DNA of 63,907 bases, counting the filler, from Octopus bimaculoides (taxonomy: Eukaryota): NCBI RefSeq assembly GCF_001194135.2. It is 4 parts of 4 records of this genome, joined end to end, with 100 filler letters (N's around TTAATTAATTAA, not from the genome) between each part and the next. Parts side by side here need not be neighbours in the genome. Positions count along the whole stretch, not along the records: positions 1 to 18,302 come from NC_069004.1; 3 more parts are not named here. The stretch is one strand, 5' to 3'. The position numbers were made by a program, and so were the translations under genes. How positions within the stretch are numbered: the stretch's first letter is position 1; each line of letters starts with the position of its first letter. Under the pieces are notes generated by a model. That model was not told the origin of the DNA, ran no database searches, and saw only the letters and a program-made list of their open reading frames with translations. Positions 1 through 18,302 of this stretch are shown here, piece by piece.

Positions 1-55
<55 letters not shown>

Positions 56-119
56 TATATACATATATATATGTATATATATATATATATATACATATAT
101 ATATGTATATATATATATA
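1..119. repeat. (TA)n microsatellite
   Basis: Near-pure TA dinucleotide run with occasional CA/TG. Many similar (TA)n, (CA)n, (CT)n, (TATG)n, (ATCT)n and (ATT)n tracts occur throughout the window, often at gap edges. Confidence 0.97.
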
Positions 120-454
120 CTCAACTATTGTTCTCTTATTTTATTGGTATGTCTTGATTGTTGATAGCCAAAATGTTGTAACAGTCTTAATGTCATTTCA
201 TCGCAAAATATTCTTTCATTGCAAATTGTGATATATTTATCTATTTTTTTACATATTTATTTATATATTCATTTATTTATTTATATGGTCTTTTATTTAT
301 TTATTTAATTATTTATTGTATTTATCAAAAATAATTTAAAATGAGACAATAACTATAGAACCTAAAATATATATATATATGAGAATCCCTTGACAAAAAT
401 TCTGCAGGAATTCACACAGAAATTTTCAAAGAAATTGGCCTATTTCCCTCTACT

Positions 455-785
455 ACTCCATCTATCATCCTTTTGCGGGGTCAAGAACATAAGTGAAACA
501 AGTTCCAGTTGAGCAGTGGTGGTGGTGGTTGTGGGGGGTGGGGTCAATGTAATCCCTGCAAATTTGAAGCCTTGTGCATTTAGTAGAATGAATTATTTAG
601 CAGCGTTTTGTCTGTCTTTACATTCTGTGTTCAAATTCTTCTGATGTAGAGTCTGCCCTTCATTCTTCCAGGGTCGATAAGATAAATACCAGTTGAATAC
701 TGGGTGCTCGAGGTAATTGACTTACCCTCCTCCCCAAGCTGCTGGCCTTGTGTCAAAATTAGAAACCATTATTATTATTATCAAA
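455..785 (+). mobile_element. Two degenerate copies of tRNA-derived SINE family A
   Basis: Match by eye to the family defined at 60944-61161 (gttcaaatt B-box, cttcattcttccagggtcgataag..ataccag core, ggccttgtg..tagaaa + (ATT)n tail). Boundaries approximate. Confidence 0.7.
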
Positions 786-863
786 TTCAAATTACGACAA
801 ACGTAAATAAACAAGCGAAGCTTGCTTTTAGAAGCGTTGAGATGTCTTTTTTATAGAAAGTTG

Positions 864-1068
864 AAGAAGTGATGTTTAAATTCTCAATCACAGAATAATG
901 CTAATAATATACCCTGAACAGGATAAACTATCCCTATTTCTGCAGAGAAAAGTGTAGGTGGCCACAGCTGGCCACCTACACTTTTCTCTGCAAAATAGGG
1001 ATAGTTTATCCTGTTCAGGCTATATTATTAGCATTATTCTGCGATTGAGAATTTAAACATCACTTCTT
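864..1068. repeat. Near-perfect palindrome, about 100-bp arms, 4-nt spacer
   Basis: 864-964 is the reverse complement of 969-1068 around the spacer CAGC, with three differences (two substitutions, one indel). Confidence 0.95.
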
Positions 1069-1094
1069 TAATTATTATTATTATTATTATCATC

Positions 1095-1270
1095 AATATT
1101 ATCTGACAGCAGAATTACAAACACGTGAAGCAAAATGCTTAGTGGTATTTCATCAGTCGACTTACATGCAGAGTTCAAATCTTTCCGAGGTTAGTTTCTT
1201 TACAATGAAGTACCAGCCAGGATCCCCATTGAAGTTGCTGGCCCTTTGCGAAAATTGGTCTTTTCATCCG
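1095..1270 (+). mobile_element. SINE family A, 3'-truncated
   Basis: gcagaatta..gcaaaatgcttagtggtatttc..gagttcaaatc..ccgaggttag head, interrupted before the core ends. Confidence 0.65.
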
Positions 1271-1425
1271 ACGTCACTTCGTCAACGGTCATTTCGTCCA
1301 TGTCCTTTGGTCCAACATCTTTTAGACTGATGATTTTTTTTTTGTCCAACGACAAATCCTATCCCTAAAATTCTCAATAATTATTTGATTTTGATGATTA
1401 TATATATATATATATNNNNNNNNNN

Positions 1426-1760
1426 AGACAAGAAAAGACTGAATGAGACCTCAATATTATGTAAATAGAGGAATTTATCTGTAAATATAATATGCGACAA
1501 TTATTCGGTTGCCATAATAAGACTCCGAGTTTCGGATGTTGGGCCGGAAAACTGCTCCGGCATCTCATCAGTTATCGAGGCAATCAAAAATTGTTACGAA
1601 AATGACCGTTAAACAAAGGGAACTTACTATGTAATTGACCGTTATTAAGACAAAAGAGCAATTAGAATGACCACTAAATAAGGGGGGAAAAAAACCAAAG
1701 GAGAGAAGGTAAACAAGGAAATAAAAAAACTCATAGAAATCGTGTAGGCACACATGTACA
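1426..1760 (-). mobile_element. Penelope-like pseudo-LTR / 3' region fragment
   Basis: Carries a hammerhead motif (1516-1576) and an AACGGTCATTT motif also present in the 3' region of the PLE at about 50580. No ORF is visible; a 10-N gap lies on the left. Confidence 0.55.
1516..1576 (-). ncRNA. Type I minimal hammerhead ribozyme with canonical core
   Basis: Minus strand reads GATAA-CTGATGA-GATG CCGGA gcagttt TCCGG cccaa CATC C-GAA-ACT cgg AGT-C|TTATT. It shows stem I (5 bp including one G.U), CUGAUGA, stem II, GAAA, a short stem III and a GUC cleavage triplet. Confidence 0.8.
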
Positions 1761-2825
1761 TGCATGCGATGCACGCATGCACACCCACGTACATGTGCTT
1801 ATATGCATATGCTCACTCACATGCATATATATATATGTATGTGTGTGTGTGTGTGTATGTATATATATTGTGGGTGTCTTTCTAGTAGTTTGTGTAAAGA
1901 AAACCAGATTTACAACACTAATTAAACAATACATTCCCCTCCATCCACATTAAAAAAAAAAAATTATCCATGTTAATTAAGAAAAATTATCAAAATTTAA
2001 TTTGGTTCATATTTCTCTGAAAATCTCTGAGAATTCCTGTGTGATGCAAAAAGAATGGAAAAGATTTTTTTACAACTCCCCCCTCAATGCCCACTCATGC
2101 TCCCTCATTCAACCTTCATCATCAGAAAATTAAAAGAAAAGAATATTAAATAAAAAAACCAAAAAAACATTCAAGCAATGAAAACAAATCTGTTGGGGGA
2201 TCTCTCTCTTTCTCTCTGTCTCTCTTTAGTATCTGTTACCCCCCCCCCCNNNNNNNNNNNACTTTTTTTCTTCTTCTGGTTCTTGTATGTTGGTGTATGT
2301 TATCACGATTTCTTATAACTAAATATTAAGCAAAGAATAAAATAAAATAAAATATATGATAAATACTACCACCACCACCACTACTATTATTATCACTGGT
2401 AACGCTACCACCACCACCACCACCAACTCCACTACCAGCATCACCATCATTTATTTACACCACCATTGACAATGCCATTTAACATCGATGATAGCAACCT
2501 TACCATTGCTGGCAGTTATAGTACCATCACTATTAACCGCGCTGTCGTTCACGTTGACAGCAACAAAAAAAATACCAATATTGCTGCTGCCACCTACAAC
2601 AATAACATTATCACTTCCACTATCACCCTCATCATCATTGTCAACAACAATACTGTCACCACCACCACCACCATAACCACAGCAGCAGTAGCCATGACTC
2701 CTACACTATCACTCCCTCTCACCACAACCATCACCATCAACAACAAGAAACAACTGAATCCCTATAACTATCTCCATCATCAACAATATTCTCTCTACCA
2801 CCCCTTCTACCATTGTAAGCCGTCA

Positions 2826-2975
2826 CACTATATTATACATATATCAGCTGTAGAAACTCTGCCAAATCAGATTGGAGCCTGGTGTAGCCATCTGGTTTCA
2901 CCAGTCCTCAGTCAAATCGTCCAACCCATGCTAGCATGGAAAGCGGACGTTAAACGACGACGACGACGACGATAT
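2826..2975 (+). mobile_element. 3' tail of an RTE-clade LINE or RTE-mobilised SINE
   Basis: cagctgtagaaactctgccaaa..ccaacccatgctagcatggaaagcggacgttaaacgacgacg is the same tail as the RTE fragment ending at 38232. Confidence 0.75.
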
Positions 2976-3304
2976 TTGATAAACCTACAAATTTGATAAA
3001 CTTACAAGACTAATTTCTCTCAAAATTTGATTAACCTACAAGACAAGGTGAAAGTGCTAATTTATAAAACATGTGACATATGAATAAAAATCTGTAGATA
3101 TACAACCATCCAAACATCTGAGTACCTGATTATTATTTTTTCTAATATATAATTCTTGTACATCGCCACAAAACCTTCCAATATATATATATATATGTCA
3201 AGCTAATGAGAAAGGCAATACATTATTATCTGACATGCAAGAGCTAACAGCCAAATACTACACACTTTAGCAAGTTAACTCCACCCTGATTGATATGGGC
3301 TATG

Positions 3305-3440
3305 CAGGATTGTTAGAACATCCAGCAAATACCTTGTAGCGTTCGTTTTGGCTCTGAGCATTTCTGAATTCAAATCTCACTACAGTCAGCTTAACTTTTC
3401 ATCCTTCCAAATGTCAGTAAAATGAAGGACATGCTCCCTT
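3305..3440 (+). mobile_element. SINE family A, degenerate
   Basis: gcaggattgttag..ctgaattcaaatctcac..aacttttcatccttccaaatgtcagtaaaatgaag. Confidence 0.55.
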
Positions 3441-4194
3441 TCTCTTTTGCTTTCTGAGAGTTGGTTGCATTGCATTGTGGGAAGGATGTTGGAGATATAA
3501 CTTTTACTCCAAGACATCTGTTCTATGTGGCTGTGTGAAAGCTCTGTGACAGCTATTATTTGAAGGGAAGACACATTGAGATAATCTGGTCTAGGATTCC
3601 CTGCAGGAAGGAAGAAAAAATTGGGATGGTCATGGTTGGAATGTTTTTGATCCTAGGTTTATTTGATCAGAACTGGCAAGAGACGAAAGAAGAACCCTAT
3701 ATTGCTACTACCATCGTGCTACCCCTACCACCAAGATGACTACTACTATGACACCACTACCACTAACACCAATGCTATCTCTACACCACTACTGCACTAC
3801 AACCACCACCACATCACTGTAATTACCACTACTATCAGCAGTACCACTTCCATGCTACTTCCTCCACTATGACTACTGCCAACACCTCATTTCTACCATC
3901 ACACACCACCACTACCACTTTCTACAATCACACATCACTACCACCACGACTACCAGAACTCATTTTCACCCAGGATATAGCAATTACAAAAGGGTGGGTC
4001 AGATATGTAAATTAGTAATTTAGATGGGAGTATGCAAATTCAATGACTTGTTGCATAAAATTTCTAACAAATTAAATTGGACATTCGTCTTCAACATCCC
4101 TCTCTCTCTCTCTCTACAATTACTCCAAAATCTCAAATTTGTATCAGAGATTAAAGCACACACACATCCACACAGAGAAACATATGCACATAGA

Positions 4195-4231
<37 letters not shown>

Positions 4232-4368
4232 AAGGCTATGCATATATGGATAACATAAATAAAATTGTCTCTTTGATATTAGTCAATGTTAAAAAAAGAA
4301 ACATTTACACATCCTCATCCTCATCATTATATACACCTTGTTCTTTCATACTGTCTTCACTCTGTCTG

Positions 4369-4436
<68 letters not shown>

Positions 4437-4874
4437 TACATACAACTCATTATATGACTACAAATGGTGGTGTTCTGATAATGTATATACTCTACCCNNN
4501 NNNNNNNNNNNNNNNNNNNNNNNNNNNNNNNNNNNNNNNNNNNNNNNNNNNNNNNNNNNNNNNNNNNNNNNNNNNNNNNNNNNNNNNNNNNNNNNNNNNN
4601 NNNNNNNNNNNNNNNNNNNNNNNNNNNNNNNNNNNNNNNNNNNNNNNNNNNNNNNNNNNNNNNNNNNNNNNNNNNNNNNNNNNNNNNNNNNNNNNNNNNN
4701 NNNNNNNNNNNNNNNNNNNNNNNNNNNNNNNNNNNNNNNNNNNNNNNNNNNNNNNNNNNNNNNNNNNNNNNNNNNNNNNNNNNNNNNNNNNNNNNNNNNN
4801 NNNNNNNNNNNNNNNNNNNNNNNNNNNNNNNNNNNNNNNNNNNNNNNNNNNNNNNNNNNCATGCTTGACTTAAT

Positions 4875-4881
4875 GCTATTG

Positions 4882-4912
<31 letters not shown>

Positions 4913-4940
4913 CATATTACTATTATCATTATTATAGTAC

Positions 4941-4982
<42 letters not shown>

Positions 4983-5087
4983 CTTCATCCTCATCATCAT
5001 TATTATCATCGCCATCCTCATCATTATTTATCATTATTATTATTATTATTATTATTACTATTACTATTATTATTATTATTATTATTT
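4875..5087. repeat. (ATT)n/(ATC)n microsatellite directly upstream of the RBFOX exon acceptor
   Basis: About 210 nt of tattat/tcatca repeats running up to the short pyrimidine tract ttttcctc. Confidence 0.95.
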
Positions 5088-5093
5088 TCCTCG

Positions 5094-5099
5094 TGCATG
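5094..5099 (+). promoter_or_regulatory. RBFOX-binding motif UGCAUG in the 3' splice-site region
   Basis: ttttcctcgTGCATGcag|GGA: the motif occupies positions -9 to -4 of the acceptor. Confidence 0.8.
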
Positions 5100-5102
5100 C
5101 AG

Positions 5103-5195
5103 GGATTTGGTTTTGTAACTTTCCAAAATAGCGCTGATGCCGACCGAGCACGTGAAAAACTGAACGGAACTGTTGTTGAGGGACGAAAAATTGAG
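5103..5195 (+). CDS. RBFOX: RBFOX family RNA-binding protein, 93-nt internal exon encoding the second half of the RRM
   Basis: cag|...|gtgcat, phase 0-0, 31 codons: [31 protein letters not shown]. Nearly identical to the recalled vertebrate RBFOX1/2 sequence [31 protein letters not shown]. No other RBFOX exons were recognised in the segment. Confidence 0.96.
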
Positions 5196-5196
5196 G

Positions 5197-5202
5197 TGCA
5201 TG
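5197..5202 (+). promoter_or_regulatory. RBFOX-binding motif UGCAUG overlapping the 5' splice site
   Basis: GAG|gTGCATGgtt: the motif covers donor positions +2 to +7, and the donor is non-consensus (GTGCAT rather than GTAAGT). Confidence 0.8.
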
Positions 5203-6024
5203 GTTAATTATCAGCTGTGGTACTTGCAACTACACTGAAAGCCATATTTTTTTTCATTCTCTATCTTCTTGTCTTTCCTCTTCTTCCTCTTCATAAAAAA
5301 TCTTCCTTTCTTTCTTTTTATTTTTTAAATGTTTCTATCTATCTACCTTTATCTATCTCTTTATCTATCTATCTATCCCTCTGTCTATCCTGCCCTACTT
5401 TCTTATATATATATATATATAGATATATATACACATGTGTGTGTACATATATATACACACACATATATACAAGTTAGTAATATGTGTATATGGTCACATT
5501 TTCACATATACACATAAATAATTTTGGCAAATATATTCATTGTTTATAGACATACATCTAAGTATCTGTACACATGCTTGTGTATATGTGTGTATATACA
5601 TACATGCAAGCATAAATATATAAATATGTATGTGTGTGTATACACATAGCAACCAAAGAAATTTTGATGTGTGCAGGTAGATATGATAATATACCTGGAA
5701 ATTAATCTCCATGTGTATTGTATATATGTATATATATATTTATTTATCTCCAAATCTTTTCTAATTATCACATAAAATTGTACCCTGTTAACATTAATCA
5801 AAGCTATTTTTTAATACCAGTTATATACTATAGGTGGGGTATCTCTCCTAAAAATTTAAGGCCTTGTGTTGTGAGAATAGGTGTGAATATATGGAATCCT
5901 ATGGGTCAGAAATTTTATATGCTGTCTTTCATTAACTGCCTCTGTTTCATGGAATCAAACCCTTGTTGATTCCCAAAAATGCATGAGTAAGGAAGAACAG
6001 TAGTCTGTGATTCTGCTCTAAATG

Positions 6025-6785
6025 ACTGCCAGAATCATTATTGTGTCATTCAGAACATTTGGCAGCATTTCTTCCAGTTCTCTACGGTGACGAGCTGGCA
6101 AAATTATTAGCATGCTGGGCAAACTGCTTAGCGATATTTTGTCTTTCACTACGTTCTGAGTTCAATTTCTGCTGAAGTCGACTTTGCCTTTCATCCTTTG
6201 GGAATCGATAAAATATAAGTACCAGGCAAGTGCTGGGGGTTGATGTAATCGACCTATCCCTTGCCCCACAATTTCAGGCCTGTGTACCTATAGTAGAAAG
6301 GTTCCTTATTCAGCTGGCAGAATCATTAGCAAACCAGATTAAATGCTTAGTTGCATTTTGTCTGTGATGTTTTGAGTTCAAATTCAGCCAAGGCCAATAT
6401 TTGCTTTTCATCCATTCAGGGACAATGAATAAAGTACCTGTAAAACAGGGGGGGGGGGTCGATGTAATTGAATAGTCCCCTCTCCTCCCAATATTTCAGG
6501 CCTTGTGCCTTTAGTAGAAAGGATTATTATTATCATTATTAAGTTTTTGAGTTGGCAGAATCGTTAGCACACCAGGTGAAATGCTTAGCAATATTTCATC
6601 TGCCACTACGTACTGAGTTCAAATCCCACTGAGGTTGGCTTGGCCTTTTATCCTTTCGGGGTTGATAAATTAAGTACCAGTGAAACACTGGGGTTGATCT
6701 AATTGACTAGTCCCACCCCCTCCAAATTTCAGGCCTTGTGCCTTTAGTAGAAAGGATTATTATTATTATTATTATTATTATTATA
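6025..6785 (+). mobile_element. Head-to-tail array of SINE family A (one partial + three near-complete copies)
   Basis: Copies start at about 6025, 6085, 6311 and 6549, with short or (ATT)n spacers. The copies are mutually diverged. Confidence 0.88.
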
Positions 6786-7029
6786 CAAAAGCTATTAAGT
6801 GCTAATTTAATTAGCAGAAATGTTATCCTATGGTTTGGTGATAACAAGTCTTCTCAATTATTTAAGAATTGTTCTGAGGGTTCCTATAGGATACAGGATT
6901 GCACCTTTCTGCAGACTGATATTATTGCAAGTCCCAATATCAATATCCTTCATCCTCTAAGATATCCATTTGGGTTTTGTGCCCACTGTGCCTGTTACCT
7001 CCGGACCAATTGTCTCCTTTTGTCCTGGG

Positions 7030-7175
7030 GTTGACTTTGCCTTTCATCCTTTTGAGGTTGATATAATAAGTACCAGCTGAACACTGGGGTCGATGTAATC
7101 GACTTACCCCCCCCCCCCCACTCACGAACTTGCTGGCCATGTGCCAAAATTTGAAACTATTATTATCATTTTTAT
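7030..7175 (+). mobile_element. SINE family A, 5'-truncated
   Basis: gttgactttgcctttcatcctttgaggttgatataataagtaccag..ggggtcgatgtaatcgacttacc..gaaactattattat. Confidence 0.8.
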
Positions 7176-8595
7176 TATCTTGGCGTACAAATATCTTGTT
7201 TTCATAAGTTTTGAATTAAAATCTTCCACAAACGTTAGTCACAATTTATGTTCCTAACACTAGCTTAATGATAACTAAGTTATTATACCAAATTCTTTGT
7301 TATATTTAAAATTAATTGAAAGAAACATAAAGCATCTCAAAATAAATCCGGCAACGAAAGGGTTAAGAATCATATGTAGTGTTTTATTTCTTACCTGGAA
7401 AATATAATATTTACTCGCAAACCCTGCAAGGCAGAATTGTCGGGGTATCCTTCTTCTTCAGAGTAAAAGACAAAAGGCTAAAAATATTAGCATTATTATT
7501 ATCACCATCATGTCTGAGAGTTGCATCGTGTATTCAAGATGGCATATTACTTGAATTATGATAGCTACATCTTGGAAGACTTGAATAAAATTGCACAAAC
7601 CCTATTTGTTGCTCCCTCATATTTACTGCTAGGGTGGGTCGATCAGTGACACTGTTTGAGTGTCACATACTGTGCCTTGCAGTATTTGTTCCAGCTCTTT
7701 ACATTCTGAGTTCAAACCTCACCAAAACCAGCTTATATGATTTTTCAATCTTCCAGAATTGTTATGGAACATTATCCCCTAAGGACCAGTGGGAAGGGGT
7801 CAGTTTTTAATTGAGTAACCTTTCGCTGCCGACCTGGCTGCCCCCTGGCCTTTTCACATTTATTTTATAGGGTACAATTTTATGTGTCTTTTATTTCCTT
7901 ATTTCCTTCTCTTTCTCTCTCTCTCTTTGTCTTTCTTTTTTGTCTCCTTTCCTCTCTCTCTCTCTCTCTCTCTTTGCTATTCATTTCTCTCTCTGTCGTC
8001 TTCTTCTGCTTTCTCTCACTTAAAAAAAAATAATGTCTTTTCTTACTTATTCTTGTTGTGCAGTCTTAAGACTTTGCCTATGATATATATAGTTAGTTTG
8101 TGTTGTTACTGTTGTTATGCATTGTTCTTTGACAGAATATATATATATAGACACAAGTTTAAGGGTATAAATTTAAAAAGAAAAAGACAAAACATTGTAT
8201 GCTTTTTTTTTTACTAAGTCTTTCCACTTAAATTTCCATAAATTATTTTGCTCTGTTCTAAATTGATATCAGAAGTAAAAGCCAAACAAACAACCGACCC
8301 ATCTTTAATTTAAACGAAGCCTATGTCGTTAAACCTAATTGTCATTAACAATGCAATGTTTTAAGTGTAATTAGAAGTAGATTTTGTAACACTCTCCCCC
8401 TTAAGACAAAACAATTTAAAATTGAAATTAGAAGTTATTCAGACTAAAGTAGAAATGCTGTTATTATTAGTATTGTAATGTATACGTTTCAAGTTAAATG
8501 TATGTATGTGTGTTTGTTTATGTAAGATATATACATATACACACACACACACACATAGATATATATTTACTTTTATGAGTGTACGTATGTATGTG

Positions 8596-8630
<35 letters not shown>

Positions 8631-10206
8631 ATACACACACACATATATGCATGTACACACATACATACGTATCTATTCATACACACTTGTATAGCTATCT
8701 CTCTCTCTCTCTATATATATAACTATATATATGTAAGTCAGTAAATAGTGGGGTTGTGTTAACCGCACGTGGAGAAATAATAGGAAAATGAAAAATAATA
8801 ATAAGGCAGAATGCTAAACTGGAAGCATATTTTAATAAAGATTTCTAACCGGCTTTCATTGTATAGCAAATTATCAAGAAGAGGGAGNNNNNNNNNNNNN
8901 NNNNNNNNNNNNNNNNNNNNNNNNNNNNNNNNNNNNNNNNNNNNNNNNNNNNNNNNNNNNNNNNNNNNNNNNNNNNNNNNNNNNNNNNNNNNNNNNNNNN
9001 NNNNNNNNNNNNNNNNNNNNNNNNNNNNNNNNNNNNNNNNNNNNNNNNNNNNNNNNNNNNNNNNNNNNNNNNNNNNNNNNNNNNNNNNNNNNNNNNNNNN
9101 NNNNNNNNNNNNNNNNNNNNNNNNNNNNNNNNNNNNNNNNNNNNNNNNNNNNNNNNNNNNNNNNNNNNNNNNNNNNNNNNNNNNNNNNNNNNNNNNNNNN
9201 NNNNNNNNNNNNNNNNNNNNNNNNNNNNNNNNNNNNNNNNNNNNNNNNNNNNNNNNNNNNNNNNNNNNNNNNNNNNNNNNNNNNNNNNNNNNNNNNNNNN
9301 NNNNNNNNNNNNNNNNNNNNNNNNNNNNNNNNNNNNNNNNNNNNNNNNNNNNNNNNNNNNNNNNNNNNNNNNNNNNNNNNNNNNNNNNNNNNNNNNNNNN
9401 NNNNNNNNNNNNNNNNNNNNNNNNNNNNNNNNNNNNNNNNNNNNNNNNNNNNNNNNNNNNNNNNNNNNNNNNNNNNNNNNNNNNNNNNNNNNNNNNNNNN
9501 NNNNNNNNNNNNNNNNNNNNNNNNNNNNNNNNNNNNNNNNNNNNNNNNNNNNNNNNNNNNNNNNNNNNNNNNNNNNNNNNNNNNNNNNNNNNTATATATA
9601 TATATATACACACATATACATACATATATATATATACACACATATATATATATATACACACATATATATATATATATGTAACCCTTACATGCATGCACAT
9701 ATTTACATATATCTGGTATACATATATGCGTGTGTGTGCTTGTCTGTATGTATGTGTACATGTATTTTCTTGCATACATTTAAAGCTACACATACAATAC
9801 TTACCCTTTCAAGGTGAAAGCATAGCCAAAAAAAAACCTAGAAACTTGCTCCCCAATGATTGGCTTCTAGTTATGGCACAACTATGTGGCATCATTAAAG
9901 AAACAGCTTGTATTGCAGCCTTGTAAGCTCGAATACCTTGTGAGTGATATTCATTCGAGAGAAAAAAAACTCTGTGAAGCTGTATTATTAGGGTTTTGAT
10001 CTATGATTTAAAGGGCTGTCTGTGGAATCCTTCATGATTTGTGAGCGACACTTGAAAGCCAGAAGCTGTGTGAACCTTGTTGCATGGTCTTGTTCTATAA
10101 TTTAGAGGGTCATCCATGGAATGCCTCTAGACTTGTAGGTGATGTTTGATAACTATGTGGAACAATGTTTTGTAGCCTGTGTTTATGTGAAGGTTCTATC
10201 ATACAT

Positions 10207-10260
<54 letters not shown>

Positions 10261-10319
10261 TTATTTTTATTTATGTGTTTCAGCCAAGTGGCTGCGGTCA
10301 TATATATATAGGCTTCATC

Positions 10320-10460
10320 CAGTTTCTATAGAGCAAACCTACTCACAAGGCTTTTGTCACTCCAGTACTATAAAAGAATACGTTTGTCCAGGGTGTCACA
10401 TAGTGTGACTGAGCCCAGAACCACATGGTATGATGAAATGAGCTTCCTGCCCATACTCTC
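10320..10460 (-). mobile_element. CORE-type SINE (family B), degenerate
   Basis: Reverse complement resembles 47706-47862 (actcacaaggc..tttgtccagggtgtcacatagtgtgactgagcccagaaccacatgg). Confidence 0.6.
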
Positions 10461-11321
10461 AAGCCTACGACATGATCGCATGGAATATGAGATCTCACAC
10501 TTAAAAAAAAAATAAAGGTAAAGTTTAGTGTCAGGAAAAGCATTCAGCTATAAAACAATGCTTCAAATAACGTACTCATCAGCACTCGTCCACATTGCTA
10601 TGTGTATGTGCAGGACATAATCTAATATTTATTCAGGATTTTCAGTCTCTGCTTTGCACTACACATATGCAATTCATCATAAGTGTTTATGCACGAGATG
10701 TGTGTGCATTACACATAGATGAGTGTGTGTCGAATGTGCATTTTAAAGCGTGCATGCGTGTATATGCAGACTCACACTTGGCTAGATTTGTGTATACAGA
10801 GGTATACATAAATATAGAGGTATACGTACATAGACACACACAAAGGCATATACTCAAAGAATATCTCAAAGCTTTTTGTGTGTCAGTATGTATATCATAT
10901 ATATATATATATATATAATTTTCCATTATTAGATAAGATGAAAATATATTTTTTTGAAATTCCAATAATGTCTCTTTGCATAAAATTGGAATCAATGTTA
11001 TTAGCATTGAAAATAAATCTTATAATAATTATAAAACTATATCATTATTACAGTTAATTTTTTAGTGACTAATTTTTTTCCCTTATATTAATAAAAAAAA
11101 TAATAATCAGGTTTTAAAACTTGCATCACATTCCCACTTAAGAAACAAAAATTTGCTTGTGTTAGTGGTATATGTGTGAGTGTGTGTTTGTGCATGCCTG
11201 TGTATATGCATACATATGTATACGTTTGTGTGTGTAGATATATATATGCCTGTATGTGTATTTATATACATATATGTATGAATACAAGTATATATTTATA
11301 TGTTTTAATATATGTACATGC

Positions 11322-11412
<91 letters not shown>

Positions 11413-11485
11413 AAGCATATACGTACATTATATAATTATGTATGCATATATGTATATTAACATATTTATATGTATGTATATTAAC

Positions 11486-11526
<41 letters not shown>

Positions 11527-12169
11527 CAGATGATATATATTTCAAATCACATCATACATCCTTGAAATGAATTAAGCAAGCAGTAAACCTTTAGCATTTG
11601 TAGACATGGCTTTGGTGATGCTGAGATATATAATATATATATTTCTCTATTTTTTTTTTTTTAATATGTATATAATTTCACTCAATTTGCAGTGTTTGCA
11701 CGTATACACTTTGATATGCACTATAAGATGGCATGGGCATTTTTCTTTTGAATTTTTGATTTTGGAAAGAAAATGAAAAAAAAAAACCCCAAAAAATCTC
11801 TCTAAAACCTCCCCTTCTAATTTTTTTTCATTAGTTATTTATTTGTGCGTGTACTGAGTTTTATATACTCTAATATAATATAGAATTACATAAAATGTAT
11901 AGTGATGTAAAGTATCTAATAGCGTATATTTAGAATATATAAGAAATATGTGTTTAGTAAATAAGATATAATAGATTATATAAATTATATATATATAAAC
12001 ACTAAAAGCTCCCCTTCTAACGTTTATATTAGTTTTTTTTATGTCTGTATATTGTTTACATTTTATATACAATATAGAGGTGTGTAAAATATATAGTAAT
12101 ATAAAATATCTGATAACATTTAAAATATAGAATTATGTGTTTATATAAGATATAGAATATATAAATAAT

Positions 12170-12201
<32 letters not shown>

Positions 12202-12719
12202 NNNNNNNNNNTGCTTTTAAAAAAATGTAAAAGAAATTTTACACGATTTTTCATTTAACAAAAATCATCTTTTAATTCGTAGTTGTTGTTATATCGAATG
12301 TAAACACGAAAAATAAGTAAATACATTTATCAAAATATCAAAATGTTGGAATCTCCTCTTCCATTCATACTTAATTTAGTATTTGCATATATTCTATATG
12401 TTTAAAATATATGTGTGCATAATATACATATTATGTGTGTGTGTATATATACATATATATATATATGTATATTATGTATAACCACGAAGTCTCAGAATTC
12501 AGATTTAAGTGCAGGAATAAACATCTTCCTTCAATAATGATTAATGGTATGGATTTGTTTGAATTAGTATGACTTGTTTATTATTTTTTTTTTTGTGTAA
12601 CTCTAACAAGGATAATAATATTATTAACATCATAGTCATATTATTAGCTGTAGTAATATTAGTGGTAGTAGTAATAGGAATGGTAAATAATAATATTATC
12701 TTTATTATTGGAATAAAAG

Positions 12720-13425
12720 GCAGCAGACTGGCAGAATTGTTAACATGATGGACAAAATTCTTAGCGGCATTTCGTGCATCCTTAAGTTCTGAATTCAAAT
12801 TTTGCTGAGGTTGACTTTGTCCATCATCCTTTCTTGGGTTGATGAAATAAGTACCAGTTACGCACTGGGGGTTGATAAAATCAACCACCCTTTTCTCGCC
12901 GAAATTTCAGGCCTTATGCCTATGGTAGAAAGGATGATTATTATTGTTAGTATTGAGCTGGCAGAATTGTTAGCACACCAGGCAAAATGCTTTGTGGTAT
13001 TTTGTCCACTTTTACATTCCGAGTTCAAATTCTGCCAGGGTTGACTTTGCCTTTCATCCTTTTGAAATCAATTAAATACGTTACATACTGGGGTTGTTGT
13101 AATTGACTTTCCCCCTCCCCGAAATTCCAGATCTTGTGCGTATAGTAGAAAGGATTATTATTATTATTATTATTATTATGATCAACTCTCAGCAGTTAAT
13201 AAAAGAAAGATTATTAACTATTATGATATGGTTAGGTGACAGTTTGGCAAAATCATTAGATCCTTTGGAAAATATGACCCCTAGATCTTGACATTTTGAG
13301 TTCAGATCTCATCCTTCTTCAGCTGATGAAATGAAGTGCCAGTCAAGAACTAAAGTTGGTTTAACTGACTCCCCTTCCTGTTAAAATATCAGTCCTTGTA
13401 CGTATGATAGAAACAGATATTATTA
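12720..13425 (+). mobile_element. Second head-to-tail array of three SINE family A copies
   Basis: Copies at about 12720, 12955 and 13230, each ending in gtagaaagg/atagaaac + (ATT)n. Confidence 0.85.
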
Positions 13426-13981
13426 CCTTTATACCATTGTAATTTGAATTTGTTCAATGGATCAGGTACTATCTGTACATGCTTTTGTCCACTTCTGAAG
13501 CTCAACTGACTCAGGAGAGTTCTGCCCCAAAGCCTCAACAGCACGCTACTTTCATTTTCAAATGGCTAGTGCCAGTGACAAGGCATTCTTGTGGTCAGGT
13601 AGATTTAGATTAATTTAAAGCAGGAAGTTTGTATTGTAAAACGAAGTAAAGGTAGTCTTAGGCAAGTTTATATCAAAAGAATTAAAGTTGATCTTTTAGC
13701 ATAAATATTTCTGAAAGGCTAGGACTATGAAATGGAAGAGTAAGGTCACTAGTTTGCTCAAGTCTTAATTGTGTATTCAAATTCTTCTGAAAAGAAATGC
13801 TCCATTTAATTGGATAATTTAAAGACGGAACAAAAAAGAAAAGAAAAATCCACATTGTTAATTAGTAATATTTTTATTAGTACTTTGAAAATTTTAATCA
13901 CTCTCAGGATTAAGTAAAAATAAAAGTTAATTACAGTGTTTAAAACAAATTGCAACTGAAACAACATTAAATCCCTTTATG

Positions 13982-14033
13982 ATTACATTTCTGATGAAGA
14001 GACTGATGTGTTAGAATTAATTATCAATGTAAT
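13982..14033 (+). ncRNA. Degenerate hammerhead-like motif (probably inactive)
   Basis: ATTACATT t CTGATGA agagactgatgtgtta GAA T TAATTA TC AATGTAAT. There is an 8-bp stem I and a palindromic stem III, but stem II is unpaired and GAAA has become GAAT. Confidence 0.4.
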
Positions 14034-15162
14034 TACTCAATAAACGATATTTCATCAGGAGTTTTATTCCGATATCTTCATATATTTTAGCTTCATATAA
14101 TCAGTGTGTATTATCTTATTTTGGTACAACTGAAATGTTATATTTATTCATGTTTAGAATAATAATTTGATTAATATTCGTTTAGATATCAGAAATTTAG
14201 CATGGCTAAGTCTTAAACAGGCTTCTATTAAAAGGGGTTAAATTTGGACATTTTTTTTTCCCCCACCACAAATTCTTGCCGTTAATATTCCAATGTTGTT
14301 TGTCACTATAAGAAGGAAATTGAAATTTCTTCAGAATAAGTTAGGTGGAAAAATATCAAAATATTTCATCTCAGAGTTTAGATTACATTATTTGTTTCAC
14401 AGTTTTTCAAAGCTCATCATCGTTAATGTAATTTTCTTTTTCTTAGATACCTAAATCCAAACTAAATAAAAATTTAGGTTCTCATATTTTTAAGGTCCAC
14501 AAACTTAAATTTATATATATTTTTCAATATTGGTGTTTGTATGCATATATGTATATATACACATACACACATATATATATTTACTTCTATGTATGTTTGT
14601 GTGTATGTATGATATATATATATATCTGCACAGTCATGTAGTTGTGTGTGTATGTATGTATATATATATAAATATATATATGTTACATATATGCATATAT
14701 ACGTATATGCCTTAGGAATGCATATTCTTATGAACACAGGGAAATAAAATATTTGGCAAATCCAAGTGGGCATAGCATTTAAAGTTAATATAACTAAATT
14801 AGTAACAAAAATTAAATAAAATAAAAATAAAAGGAATATTTAAATATATTGTATATGAAAGCATTGTATTCTTGAAAAATCTTGCACTAGTGTGGAAGTC
14901 CTTAAAATGGAAACTTTTGATTCCTCTTTTGACTTCTCTGTTGCATAACATGAATGTCTGTAGAGAAGCAGGCTTTGCATTAATGCAAAATTCTTCAGGA
15001 ATGTAACACTTTCATAGTATAAGCGATGTTTTTAATTACTTTACTCTAGCATAAGGAAAGGAATTTAGCATTTCTCATTCTTGATATATTTTAAAAAGAA
15101 ATGTTTTAGAAATATTCAATTTCACAATACCAATAATATATATATGGATATGCATTACATAC

Positions 15163-15204
<42 letters not shown>

Positions 15205-15216
15205 GTATATACACAC

Positions 15217-15257
<41 letters not shown>

Positions 15258-15354
15258 GTGTATATATATATGTGTACATATGTGCACATAAATATATATG
15301 TATATATGTGTATGTATATACATATATGTATATGCATGTATGTATATACATATA

Positions 15355-15392
<38 letters not shown>

Positions 15393-16589
15393 NNNNNNNN
15401 NNNNNNNNNNNNNNNNNNNNNNNNNNNNNNNNNNNNNNNNNNNNNNNNNNNNNNNNNNNNNNNNNNNNNNNNNNNNNNNNNNNNNNNNNNNNNNNNNNNN
15501 NNNNNNNNNNNNNNNNNNNNNNNNNNNNNNNNNNNNNNNNNNNNNNNNNNNNNNNNNNNNNNNNNNNNNNNNNNNNNNNNNNNNNNNNNNNNNNNNNNNN
15601 NNNNNNNNNNNNNNNNNNNNNNNNNNNNNNNNNNNNNNNNNNNNNNNNNNNNNNNNNNNNNNNNNNNNNNNNNNNNNNNNNNNNNNNNNNNNNNNNNNNN
15701 NNNNNNNNNNNTAAATGAATATTTAAAAAAAAAATAACCCCATTAATCCATGCAAACAAAAATTCAAAATATTAAACAAAGAGAAAACATCAAATTACAA
15801 AATGTAATGAATAAATTCGATGGTATTTAAATATTTTTATGTAATTTATTATTCAGGCTAAATTAGGGTTTTTTTTACTGTTCAAAATAGAGCTCGTTTA
15901 ATTTTTAGGTGTTCCCCGTATTTTTAAACATTTTATTAATTACTTATTCAAAATATACATAGATGTCTTGATTGTTATATATTACTATCACTCCTTTAAT
16001 GCTTCTAGAAGTTATAGCAAATTAATTTGTAGTGAATTCTTAAATCGTTGTTAAATGTCATTATTTCTTAGATAATACAAAATGATGAGGTGAAATTATT
16101 AATATCTATTCTCTTTTAAATTTTCAGTGCAGTCAAGGACTTATTGTGTATTGTGTGGGTGAATGTATGCATAAACTGAAATTAAAATACATGACTTTTT
16201 AATTAATTCATTAAGTGATTAAGTCAGATTAGATGTAGCACAGCATTTGGGGTTACAATTGTATTAATAATAATAATAATAGTAATTGTATTAATAATAA
16301 TAATAAGGAGAATGTTATGAAAGGATAACCAGTTACATTGCATTTCCATATGTGTTTGCTAACATGTGGAACGGTTTTAATCTTTGAGATCAGGATCGAA
16401 TGCAGTTATGATTATAGAAATCATCTGAACAATAGTGTTGAAGCAACAGTGAATAATTATATGACCCCAGGTTCAAATCCTAGTGCTGGTATTGTGATGT
16501 ATGTTGTTTAGTGAAAGGTTGTTTCGTCTTTTTAGGCTCAGGTTAGTATCTCTTATCTGGGACATTTGTAGCTATATTGGAAGAGAGTA

Positions 16590-16750
16590 CACACTATAAT
16601 GTGTTTGGCATTAGGAAGGGCATCTAACCATAAAAATCCTGCCAAAGTGGGTATTGGAGCACAAGGCATTCTTTGGGCCTGGGAGATTGTTTCAAACCAG
16701 CCAGCCCTTGCCAGTATGGAACATGAATGTTAAATGAGGAGGATGATGAT
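16590..16750 (+). mobile_element. RTE-type 3' tail
   Basis: tggcattaggaagggcatctaaccataaaaatcctgcc...gaacatgaatgttaaatgaggaggatgatgatg. Confidence 0.6.
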
Positions 16751-17139
16751 GATGAGGAAGAGGAGAATACCAGTTCAGACTTACAGTCAAAGATGACCAA
16801 AGTTATGATCAGTAGCACTGGAGCCTTTGGTTAAAGAACATACTTTTACAGCTGAACAAACTGGGGTAGTGTGAAATTAAATGTTTTACCCAAAGACACA
16901 CATGCACTACCTGGTTGAAGAATGGAACTCGTGGCCTTATGACTGTGTACCAAATGAAAATATTGAAAGGAGATGCATTAAAATATGTACTAAGCTCAAG
17001 TTAATTGACTATGGTGAGACAGCAGCATGGCAGGACTCCATTGAATGAGATAAAAAAAAAAAAGATATAAATGAAAGGAGACAATGCACCAAATGATAAC
17101 AAGAAGGCCAGTAGTATATTAAATGAAAATAACCATCAA

Positions 17140-17400
17140 GTCATCATCATCATCATCATTTTAATGTCTTTCATGCTTGCATGGGTCAGATGGACTTTGT
17201 TGAAGCTGGTATTTTTATGACTGGATACTCTTCCTGTTGCCAACCCTTACCCGTTCAAAAGCATGATAGTATTTGGCCAGACATCTTTCTCATTGAAGAC
17301 TGGAAATATGGGACAACACTCGTATGACAGTGACACTTGTCTGTAACTATTACGTGGTGTCCAGACTGGATGGTCACATCTGGAACATAATGTCAATAGA
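17140..17400 (-). mobile_element. RTE-type 3' tail / SINE
   Basis: (CAT)n followed by ttttaatgtctttcatgcttgcatgggtcagatgg..ggatactcttcctgttgccaacc, the reverse complement of the RTE tail. Confidence 0.55.
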
Positions 17401-17494
17401 TATAGTCCTTGATCTAACATGGCAGCCTTTGAGTAGTTGTTCAGCTTACTAGAGGAAGCTGAGAAACTTCACTCAGATTACATCCTACCGTCTT

Positions 17495-17720
17495 AGCTGA
17501 TGTGAAGGGGCATGTAAGATTGTGGTTTCAAATCCTGGACCAGGTGACGCAATGTGTTCTTGAGCAAAACACTTCATTTCATATAGCTCCAGTCCACTTA
17601 GCTGGCAAAAATGAGTAATCGTGCAACAGGCCGGTGTCCCATCCAGTGGGGAATATATATTTGCCATGGAAACCAAGGAAACCAGCCCTGTGAATCTCCA
17701 TGACTGCGAAAGGATTTAAG
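17495..17720 (+). mobile_element. tRNA-derived CORE-like SINE
   Basis: B-box ggtttcaaatcc, then ttgagcaaaacacttcatttca..ctccagtccacttagctggcaaaaatgagta. Confidence 0.6.
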
Positions 17721-18268
17721 CTGAATCCGCCACCAAGATAAAAACATGGCACATTGGACGATATACACCGAATGGAATACTTTTGAGCATAAGACTATGC
17801 AATCAGAGCAGATGCTGGGACCTGCTTTATAAGCTAATATCCCTGTTTGTGGATGCCATAAAATGCACCTAAATCTCATCCTGAAATTGCATGCCGTCCA
17901 AAAGACAAACAAAGAATTGATGGTTGCAGCTGGACTGTAGAGTCTTGAGTGGCCTTGGGCTGAACAATAAGATGACAAATGACCACAATAAGTCAATGTG
18001 AGACTGCACTGGATTTTGCCGTTAATCTTTCCGAATAATTGTTTTCTGAAAATAAAGCCTTCTTAAGTAGTGAATTACAGAATAGAAGACATTTATAGAA
18101 AATGAATTATAAAGAAATATATTTTAATACGTGTGTGTGTGTGTGTGCATACATGCATGTATGTATAAGTATAGACATTTGTGTGTGAGTGAGTGTATAG
18201 CGATATATATGTTTGTATGTGTATATACATACATATGTACATGTTCATATATGTATATATATGTGAGA

Positions 18269-18302
<34 letters not shown>

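What the first reader, a model, noticed from the sequence alone, without database searches (positions are those of the whole stretch)
5088..5205. RBFOX RRM exon with its own binding motif at both splice sites: candidate autoregulatory switch conserved in a cephalopod
Seen: a 93-nt, phase 0-0 exon encoding RNP1 and the second half of the RRM. TGCATG lies at acceptor -9..-4 and at donor +2..+7, and the donor (GTGCAT) is weak. Established: vertebrate Rbfox1/2 repress their homologous 93-nt exon through flanking UGCAUG elements, producing an in-frame RRM-truncated isoform described as dominant-negative (Baraniak et al. 2006; Damianov and Black 2010). Inference: the same feedback loop operates here, with RBFOX sterically blocking U2AF and U1. 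That would place the circuit before the protostome-deuterostome split. The exon sits among rapidly evolving microsatellites, so two perfectly placed motifs imply selection. The bases CATG at 4860-4863, right at a gap edge, could be the end of a third motif.
Basis: partly seen in the sequence, partly recalled or inferred. Interest (0 to 1): 0.72.

Follow-up and report, generated by a model that had tools for sequence, protein, structure and literature searches.

The report
RBFOX self-regulated RRM exon, cephalopod copy
This is the cephalopod copy of a known exon of the RBFOX splicing-factor gene whose two splice sites carry RBFOX's own binding motif; the same layout occurs in oyster, snail, worm, insect and bird, so it is ancient but not new.

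Summary
Window 5103-5195 (+) is a 93-nt, phase 0-0 exon encoding [31 protein letters not shown], which is RNP1 and the second half of the RBFOX RRM. TGCATG lies at 5094-5099 (acceptor -9..-4) and at 5197-5202 (donor +2..+7). The donor, GAG|GTGCAT, is weak.

The placement is not chance. I fetched the homologous exon from seven other animals. Cuttlefish, Pacific oyster and turkey RBFOX1 carry TGCATG at exactly -9 and +2. Capitella has -10/+2, the pond snail -9/+6, and the psyllid Diaphorina GCATG at -8 with TGCATG at +4. A leech has lost both motifs, and a mite has lost both introns.

Sixteen annotated gastropod and bivalve protein models join ...ERGSK directly to VNNATARV..., which is the in-frame skip of this exon. 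In the oyster that isoform maps to the same locus. No cephalopod record showed the skip.

The best reading is the orthologue of the vertebrate RBFOX delta-RRM autoregulatory cassette (Damianov and Black 2010). That work, as later papers cite it, already noted an equivalent alternatively spliced exon in Drosophila, so the pre-bilaterian-split inference is supported but not new. The "third motif" at the gap edge cannot be confirmed.

Verdict: new member of a known kind, modest interest.

The parts
5103..5195 (+). 93-nt, phase 0-0 cassette exon of an RBFOX gene. It encodes RNP1 (GFGFVTF) and the second half of the RRM (31 aa).
   Evidence: Translation. tblastn with human and Octopus RBFOX. The Octopus RRM, typed in from P0146, matches solved RBFOX1 RRM structures at E 7e-46. 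The same 93-nt exon is present in 7 other species.
5094..5099 (+). TGCATG (RBFOX site) at acceptor -9..-4. It interrupts the pyrimidine tract just before the CAG acceptor.
   Evidence: The position is the same (-9) in Sepia, Magallana, Lymnaea and turkey, -10 in Capitella, and GCATG at -8 in Diaphorina.
5100..5102 (+). CAG, the 3' splice site (acceptor).
   Evidence: This column is invariant in alignment A1.
5196..5202 (+). Weak 5' splice site GTGCATG. TGCATG (5197-5202) occupies donor +2..+7, the bases U1 snRNA must pair with.
   Evidence: GTGCATG is identical in Sepia, Magallana, Capitella and turkey. The motif is shifted to +6 in Lymnaea and +4 in Diaphorina.
5080..5093 (+). Short pyrimidine tract (tattattttcctcg) ahead of the acceptor motif.
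   Evidence: It is 71% pyrimidine over -20..-4 and aligns with ttattttcct in Sepia and oyster.
4884..5086 (+). (ATT)68 microsatellite. It sits between the proximal acceptor elements and the remnant of the upstream conserved block.
   Evidence: Tandem Repeats Finder. Sepia has only cATTATTtt at the corresponding place.
4860..4883 (+). Remnant of the upstream conserved block (catgcttgacttaatgctattgtc). It aligns with cuttlefish -46..-17, which there holds GCACG (-43) and TGCATG (-31). In the window these read GCTTG and GCTATTG.
   Evidence: Local alignment, score 28, 24 of 30 matches. Motif table.
5203..5245 (+). Downstream intron block conserved among molluscs (gttaattatcagctgtggtacttgcaactacactgaaag). 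Its role is unknown.
   Evidence: Local alignments with Sepia (score 54), oyster (38) and Lymnaea (28). Alignment A1.

Best explanation
What it is: the window holds the cephalopod orthologue of the RBFOX 'RRM exon', the 93-nt exon called exon 6 in mammalian RBFOX2.

Proposed mechanism:
1. The pre-mRNA carries the protein's own high-affinity site, UGCAUG, on both splice sites. One copy lies between the pyrimidine tract and the CAG acceptor. The other lies inside the 5' splice site, at +2..+7.
2. When nuclear RBFOX is abundant it binds these sites. It then competes with U2AF at the acceptor and with U1 snRNP at an already weak donor, and the exon is skipped.
3. The skip is in frame. It removes RNP1, helix 2 and strand 4 of the RRM. 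The product cannot bind RNA and, in mammals, counteracts the full-length protein.
4. The result is a negative feedback on RBFOX activity rather than on its abundance.

Shown here: the exon, the motifs and their exact placement; the weak donor; conservation of the layout across Bilateria; annotated skipped isoforms in other molluscs.

Inferred: binding by the cephalopod protein, skipping in cephalopods, the steric mechanism, and dominant-negative action.
For: Anatomy.

Orthologous layout (table):
- TGCATG at -9/+2 in Sepia pharaonis, Magallana gigas and turkey RBFOX1.
- -10/+2 in Capitella teleta.
- -9/+6 in Lymnaea stagnalis.
- GCATG at -8 with TGCATG at +4 in Diaphorina citri.

Chance: about 1e-5 to 1e-4 per species from each locus's own motif density.

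Selection:
- Only 4 of 31 third codon positions are invariant over 7 species.
- Octopod and turkey share 16 of 31 third positions, but 11 of 12 bases at acceptor -12..-1 and 8 of 9 at donor +1..+9.

Natural controls: the leech Helobdella keeps the 93-nt exon without either motif. The motif is therefore not forced by splice-site consensus.

Skipping in molluscs:
- 16 models from Pomacea, Babylonia, Littorina, Ostrea, Magallana, Crassostrea, Ruditapes, Mya, Mytilus, Potamilus and Pinctada have the junction ERGSK|VNNATARV.
- M. gigas isoform X5 equals X1 minus the exon at L003 20333-20425.
- The skipped isoform retains only positions 2-37 of the 70-position Pfam RRM_1 model.

Binding specificity:
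- The Octopus RRM (typed in from P0146) is close to identical to human RBFOX1 RRM chains across residues 2-85 (E 7e-46).
- The same search also lists 2ERR, which I recall as the complex with UGCAUGU.

Literature:
- Exon 6 encodes 31 of the 73 RRM residues, including RNP1 (PMC11380049).
- Rbfox3 represses Rbfox2 exon 6, and the equivalent exon exists in Drosophila (PMC3126832).
Against: - No cephalopod protein or transcript-derived record in the collection lacks the exon. All Octopus bimaculoides, O. vulgaris, Argonauta, Sepia and Logan/JGI cephalopod-like members that span the RRM contain it. This is absence of evidence: only annotated or assembled products were searched, not reads.
- In the window, the two extra upstream elements conserved in cuttlefish, oyster and snail (GCACG near -43, (T)GCATG near -30) are degenerate. 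They have also been moved about 230 nt away by an (ATT)68 array. The octopod switch may therefore be weaker or tuned differently.
- The general RBFOX position rule says that downstream sites enhance inclusion. Repression through the donor site is inferred only from its overlap with the U1 pairing region.
- Nothing here measures binding or splicing.
Confidence: 0.8

Rival explanations
1. In cephalopods the exon is constitutive. The two motifs are kept for another reason: basal splice-site function, another factor, or cross-regulation during development only. In that case no RBFOX feedback loop operates in this animal.
For: No delta-RRM isoform appears among cephalopod records, although the search was made with an Octopus delta-RRM query and the cluster members were inspected. 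The auxiliary upstream elements are eroded in the window.
Against: The acceptor and donor motifs and about 20 nt of flanking intron are nearly identical between the window and cuttlefish: 11 of 12 and 9 of 9 bases, against 23 of 31 third codon positions. This indicates continuing constraint inside cephalopods. Sister mollusc classes with the same cis layout do show the skipped isoform. Annotation pipelines often miss minor isoforms.
Confidence: 0.12
2. The motifs are bound by RBFOX but promote inclusion. This would be positive feedback that helps a weak exon, following the usual rule that sites downstream of an exon activate it.
For: The position-dependent RBFOX map is general knowledge. The donor is weak and would benefit from an enhancer.
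Against: The downstream site is not merely downstream. It occupies +2..+7 of the 5' splice site itself, where a bound RRM would exclude U1. The other site lies upstream of the exon, which is the repressing side. In mammals the orthologous exon is repressed by Rbfox proteins (PMC3126832; PMC11874969).
Confidence: 0.04
3. The two elements are conserved as RNA-RNA pairing partners. Upstream CAUGCA pairs with downstream UGCAUG and loops the exon out, independently of any protein.
For: TGCATGCA is self-complementary, and a 6-bp duplex between the two sites can be drawn from the sequence.
Against: - The minimum-free-energy fold of 5080-5245 does not pair the two sites and is no more stable than shuffled sequence (z = 0.04).
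- The consensus fold of seven species has a covariation term of -0.04 and no helix between the sites.
- Capitella (TGCATGGCAG), Lymnaea (+6) and Diaphorina (+4, GGCATG) change register or complementarity while keeping the GCAUG core. This is as expected for a protein site.
Confidence: 0.02
4. Chance: two hexamers that happen to fall near the splice sites in an AT-rich, repeat-rich intron.
For: TGCATG is somewhat over-represented in the window on both strands (25 against 14.4 expected).
Against: The joint placement probability is about 6e-5 in the window, and the same placement recurs in six further species from three superphyla.
Confidence: 0.01

Closest known systems
Mammalian RBFOX1/RBFOX2 'RRM exon' (RBFOX2 exon 6, 93 nt) autoregulatory cassette that produces the Fox-deltaRRM dominant-negative isoform (Damianov and Black 2010; Baraniak et al. 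2006)
   Same: - Same exon length (93 nt), phase and encoded peptide: 29 of 31 residues identical to human.
- Turkey RBFOX1 shows TGCATG at the same nucleotides, -9..-4 and +2..+7, with the same GTGCATG donor.
- The same in-frame skip is annotated in molluscs.
   Different: - In the cephalopod no skipping, RBFOX dependence or dominant-negative activity has been demonstrated.
- Turkey has further upstream TGCATG copies at -38 and -131. The window has none within 300 nt, and a 200-nt (ATT)n array lies there instead.
Drosophila Rbfox1 (A2bp1) equivalent RRM exon
   Same: It is a protostome copy of the same alternatively spliced exon (PMC3126832). From my recollection of the Damianov and Black abstract, which I could not open here, it also has flanking Fox sites. 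A hemipteran checked here has GCATG at -8 and TGCATG at +4.
   Different: It belongs to a different superphylum. The insect motif positions are shifted relative to the -9/+2 register shared by molluscs, Capitella and turkey.
Splicing-factor autoregulation by poison exons and NMD (PTBP1 exon 11, SR proteins, also RBFOX2 exons 5* and 6*)
   Same: A splicing regulator binds its own pre-mRNA to limit its own activity (PMC3126832).
   Different: Here the skip stays in frame and yields a stable, RNA-binding-defective protein rather than a transcript destroyed by NMD.

Membership tests
RBFOX (Fox-1) family gene | A single RRM with the RBFOX-type RNP1 (KGFGFVTF) and close similarity to RBFOX RRMs of known structure. 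| tested here: met
   The exon peptide is 29 of 31 identical to human RBFOX1. It is 31 of 31 identical to annotated Octopus, Argonauta and Sepia RBFOX proteins. The Octopus RRM hits RBFOX1 structures at E 7e-46. Only half of the RRM lies in the window.
RBFOX delta-RRM autoregulatory cassette | A 93-nt, phase 0-0 exon encoding the second half of the RRM, so that skipping stays in frame. | tested here: met
   The same exon boundaries occur in 7 other species.
RBFOX delta-RRM autoregulatory cassette | (U)GCAUG elements overlapping or abutting both splice sites of that exon. | tested here: met
   5094-5099 and 5197-5202. Conserved placement across species.
RBFOX delta-RRM autoregulatory cassette | The exon is actually skipped in vivo, giving an ERGSK|VNNATARV mRNA. 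| tested here: inconclusive
   The junction was found in 16 gastropod and bivalve models, and at the orthologous oyster locus. It was not found in any cephalopod record. Raw RNA-seq could not be searched.
RBFOX delta-RRM autoregulatory cassette | Skipping increases with RBFOX protein level and depends on the UGCAUG elements. | not testable with these tools
   This needs a minigene or knock-down experiment.
RBFOX delta-RRM autoregulatory cassette | The delta-RRM protein is stable and antagonises full-length RBFOX. | not testable with these tools
   The only result here is that the oyster skipped isoform keeps half of the Pfam RRM_1 model (positions 2-37 of 70).

The most novel reading that the evidence does not exclude
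Two readings go beyond what is already described.

1. The UGCAUG pair is fixed to the nucleotide (-9..-4 and +2..+7) from a bird to octopod, cuttlefish and oyster, and to within a base in an annelid. That would make it one of the oldest base-exact intronic regulatory elements known.

2. In the octopod lineage, an (ATT)n expansion has pushed away and degraded the auxiliary upstream GCACG and GCAUG elements that other molluscs keep next to the likely branch point. Octopods would then run a stripped-down, differently tuned version of the switch, or a nearly silent one. This would fit the absence of annotated skipped isoforms in cephalopods.
Probability: 0.25. Interest if true: 0.45.

Novelty: new member of a known kind. 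Interest (0 to 1): 0.3.

Why it matters
It shows that the self-limiting switch of a major neuronal and muscle splicing regulator is built the same way, almost base for base, in cephalopods, other molluscs, an annelid, an insect and a vertebrate. That supports a single origin in the bilaterian ancestor. It also gives cephalopod neurobiology a ready-made, testable handle on RBFOX activity.

It does not reveal a new mechanism. The circuit and its presence in a protostome were described in 2010. The lineage differences seen here are natural experiments on how much of the element is needed:
- motifs lost in a leech;
- introns lost in a mite;
- motif register shifted in a snail and a psyllid;
- auxiliary sites eroded in the octopod.

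Tried and rejected
1. The Damianov and Black 2010 paper could not be opened by DOI, PMC id or PubMed id, and neither could the Conboy 2017 review. I rely on how later papers describe them and mark my own recollection as such.

A 78-aa RRM query returned only short proteins and no molluscs.
- I therefore padded the RRM with random sequence to 335 aa to reach full-length proteins.
- The padding is a search device only.

3. Genomic DNA for octopods could not be obtained.
- O. bimaculoides isoform X5 is not indexed.
- The O. vulgaris and Argonauta genes exceed the 100-kb limit.
- So the 4498-4859 gap could not be filled, and the (ATT)68 array could not be checked in a second octopod.
- The Zootermopsis look-up also failed.

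4. RNA-structure explanation: rejected.

5. Window-wide TGCATG enrichment as evidence: rejected, because it is equal on both strands.

6. No other gene or long ORF of substance lies in the window. All long ORFs are microsatellite or N translations.

7. Literature searches for RBFOX autoregulation in cephalopods or invertebrates found nothing specific.

8. I did not run the metagenome scan, because its contigs would have carried no taxonomy.

Full report
**1. The observation**

Reading 4400-5700 shows ...ttattttcctcgTGCATGcag|GGATTTGGTTTTGTAACTTTC...AAAATTGAG|gTGCATGgttaa.
- The stretch 5103-5195 is 93 nt and open. It translates to [31 protein letters not shown].
- TGCATG occurs on the + strand at 5094-5099 and 5197-5202.
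- The neighbouring exons therefore lie more than 5 kb upstream and more than 13 kb downstream, or in the N runs (1416-1425, 2250-2260, 4498-4859, 8888-9592, 12202-12211, 15393-15711).
- The donor GAG|GTGCAT matches the consensus at 5 of 9 positions. Its predicted duplex with the 5' end of U1 is -5.4 kcal/mol, against -14.0 for a consensus donor.

**2. Chance**

- The piece carries 13 sense-strand TGCATG in 16,885 non-N bases. One motif start within 10 nt of each splice site has p about 0.008, and both have p about 6e-5.
- The overall excess of the hexamer (25 against 14.4) is shared equally by the two strands. I do not use it as evidence.

**3. Getting relatives**

- The protein search returned only proteins of roughly 0.6-1.8 times the query's length. 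A 78-aa RRM query gave only short fragments.
- Padding the RRM with random sequence to 335 aa brought in full-length RBFOX proteins. These came from Octopus bimaculoides, Argonauta hians, Acanthosepion (Sepia) pharaonis, many gastropods and bivalves, Lingula and vertebrates.
- All the cephalopod proteins contain the window's 31 residues exactly. The DNA differs from cuttlefish at 8 of 31 third positions, so it is a different cephalopod, plausibly an octopod.

**4. The homologous exon in other animals**

Positions of TGCATG starts are, and for Dinothrombium and Diaphorina. Upstream starts are counted from the first exon base (-1 is the last intron base); donor starts are counted from the first intron base.

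| Species | Locus and exon | Acceptor and upstream | Donor |
|---|---|---|---|
| Sepia pharaonis | L002 27002-27094 | -9, -31, -98; GCACG at -43 | +2 |
| Magallana gigas | L003 20333-20425 | -9, -118; GCATG at -30; GCACG at -43 | +2 |
| Lymnaea stagnalis | L006 14723-14815 | -9, -31; GCACG at -41 | +6 (gtgccTGCATG) |
| Capitella teleta | L001 4945-5037 | -10 (TGCATGgcag) | +2 |
| Turkey RBFOX1 | L004 6163-6255 | -9, -38, -131 | +2 |
| Diaphorina citri | L008 24112-24204 | GCATG at -8 (gGCATGcag); TGCATG near -57 | +4 |
| Helobdella robusta | L005 7270-7362 | none (ccccatccag) | none (gtaatgatg) |
| Dinothrombium (mite) | L007 | no intron on this side of the 93 nt | no intron on this side |

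The leech and the mite show that neither the motifs nor the cassette are unavoidable. The other six show that the layout is ancestral to Lophotrochozoa, Ecdysozoa and Deuterostomia.

**5. Selection**

- Across the seven species that keep the motifs, only 4 of 31 third codon positions are invariant.
- The window and turkey share 16 of 31 third positions, but 11 of 12 bases at acceptor -12..-1 and 8 of 9 at donor +1..+9.
- The window and cuttlefish share 23 of 31 third positions, 11 of 12 acceptor bases and 9 of 9 donor bases.
- The alignment (A1) shows the block ttattttcct(c/t)(g/a)TGCATGcag and GTGCATGgt shared by the three mollusc classes. A further alignable block reaches about +45 downstream.

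**6. Is the exon skipped?**

- I searched with an Octopus protein from which the 31 residues had been deleted.
- Sixteen returned models have the exact junction ...IFNERGSK|VNNATARV.... They are Pomacea X6 and X7, Babylonia X4, Littorina X7 and X9, Ostrea edulis X10, X14, X31 and X50, Magallana gigas X5, Crassostrea virginica X7, Ruditapes X9, Mya X10, Mytilus galloprovincialis X10, and independent GenBank models from Potamilus and Pinctada.
- M. gigas X5 maps to the same exons as X1 and lacks only L003 20333-20425.
- Its RRM_1 match shrinks to model positions 2-37 of 70.
- No cephalopod record lacks the exon. I checked the representatives and the cluster members of seven cephalopod or cephalopod-like clusters. 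Two members are N-terminal fragments that stop before the RRM.
- Skipping is therefore documented at annotation level for sister mollusc classes with the same cis layout. It is not documented for cephalopods.

**7. What is known**

- Later papers describe Damianov and Black 2010 as follows. All three mammalian RBFOX genes make a delta-RRM isoform. [quoted passage not shown] The product acts as a dominant negative (PMC11874969).
- Exon 6 encodes 31 of the 73 RRM residues, including RNP1 (PMC11380049).
- From my own memory, since the paper could not be opened: its abstract also says that the Fox sites overlap the splice sites in Fox-1 and Fox-2, and that the fly exon has flanking Fox sites.
- Baraniak et al. 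2006 reported Fox-2-induced skipping of its own exon 6. This too is from memory.
- Hence both the mechanism and its protostome-deuterostome depth are already in the literature. I found nothing on molluscs or cephalopods.

**8. Mechanism proposed**

- RBFOX binds UGCAUG at the end of the pyrimidine tract and inside the 5' splice site. It competes with U2AF and U1 at an intrinsically weak exon and causes in-frame skipping.
- The Octopus RRM is nearly identical to human RBFOX1 RRM chains of known structure, so the same specificity is expected.
- Binding, competition and dominant-negative action are inferences from the mammalian system.

**9. Rivals**

- An RNA duplex between the two sites is not supported. 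The fold of 5080-5245 has z = 0.04 and does not pair them. The seven-species consensus fold has no such helix and no covariation. Register shifts in Capitella, Lymnaea and Diaphorina keep GCAUG rather than complementarity.
- An enhancing role is unlikely, because the donor site overlaps the bases that pair with U1.
- A constitutive exon in cephalopods cannot be excluded, and I give it about 0.12.

**10. The third motif and the octopod peculiarity**

- The (ATT)68 array at 4884-5086 sits where cuttlefish has only cATTATTtt.
- The sequence just beyond it, 4861-4890, aligns best with cuttlefish -46..-17: ATGCTTGA-CTTAATGCTATTGTCATTATT against ATGCACGATTTTAATGC-ATGCTCATTATT.
- On that alignment the gap-edge CATG corresponds to the AATG in front of the conserved GCACG, not to a TGCATG.
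- On the same alignment, the octopod versions of the two auxiliary elements read GCTTG and GCTATTG. They lie about 230 nt from the acceptor.
- A looser alignment to the cuttlefish -98 TGCATG is also possible, so the third motif remains undecided.
- In cuttlefish, oyster and snail, the -30 GCAUG directly follows a tttaa(t/c) that looks like a branch site. This is my reading, not a test.

**11. Verdict**

- It is a new member of a known kind, the cephalopod orthologue of the RBFOX delta-RRM autoregulatory cassette.
- Interest is modest (0.3). It is a clean example of very deep, base-exact conservation of an intronic regulatory element, but neither the mechanism nor its antiquity is new, and function in cephalopods is still untested.

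Noticed in passing
window 4884-5086 and 4860-4883: An (ATT)68 microsatellite appears to have expanded from the cATTATTtt found in cuttlefish. It separates the acceptor from a remnant of the upstream conserved block, in which the GCACG and GCATG elements kept by cuttlefish, oyster and pond snail read GCTTG and GCTATTG.
   Followed up: partly
window 5203-5245; L002 27104-27140; L003 20435-20470; L006 14826-14860: A downstream intron block (…tatcagctgtggta…gcaactacactgaaag) is alignable among octopod, cuttlefish, oyster and snail. It has no obvious motif or predicted structure, and its function is unknown.
   Followed up: partly
L005 7270-7362 (Helobdella robusta): The leech keeps the 93-nt phase 0-0 exon but has no GCATG within 300 nt on either side. 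Its flanks are ATC/ATG-type microsatellites, so this is a natural loss of the motifs.
   Followed up: yes
L007 1181-1273 (Dinothrombium tinctorium): In this mite the 93 nt are embedded in a longer exon, with no intron at K|G or at E|V. The cassette does not exist there. Several unlabelled metagenome and Logan ORFs also run straight through one or both junctions.
   Followed up: partly
L006 14816-14826 (Lymnaea) and L008 24205-24213 (Diaphorina): The donor-side motif is kept but shifted: gtgccTGCATG at +6 and gttTGCATG at +4. It no longer overlaps the core of the 5' splice site in the same way, which could change how repression works.
   Followed up: no
window, whole piece: TGCATG is over-represented (25 against 14.4 expected), but equally on both strands (13 + and 12 -). 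Many copies lie within or beside AT/CA-type dinucleotide-repeat sequence (for example 1759-1781 and 9688-9697). This is not an RBFOX signal.
   Followed up: yes
window 1-18302: Apart from the one exon, the piece is intron. It holds AT, TA, TATT, ATT and CT-rich repeats and six N runs. Every ORF of 90 aa or more is a translation of repeats or of N.
   Followed up: yes
protein P0099 (Dinothrombium): A mite gene model joins ...DLRQLFG directly to GFGFVTF. It thus lacks the QFGPILDVEIIFNERGSK segment, which would be a different in-frame RRM deletion. It may be an annotation artefact.
   Followed up: no
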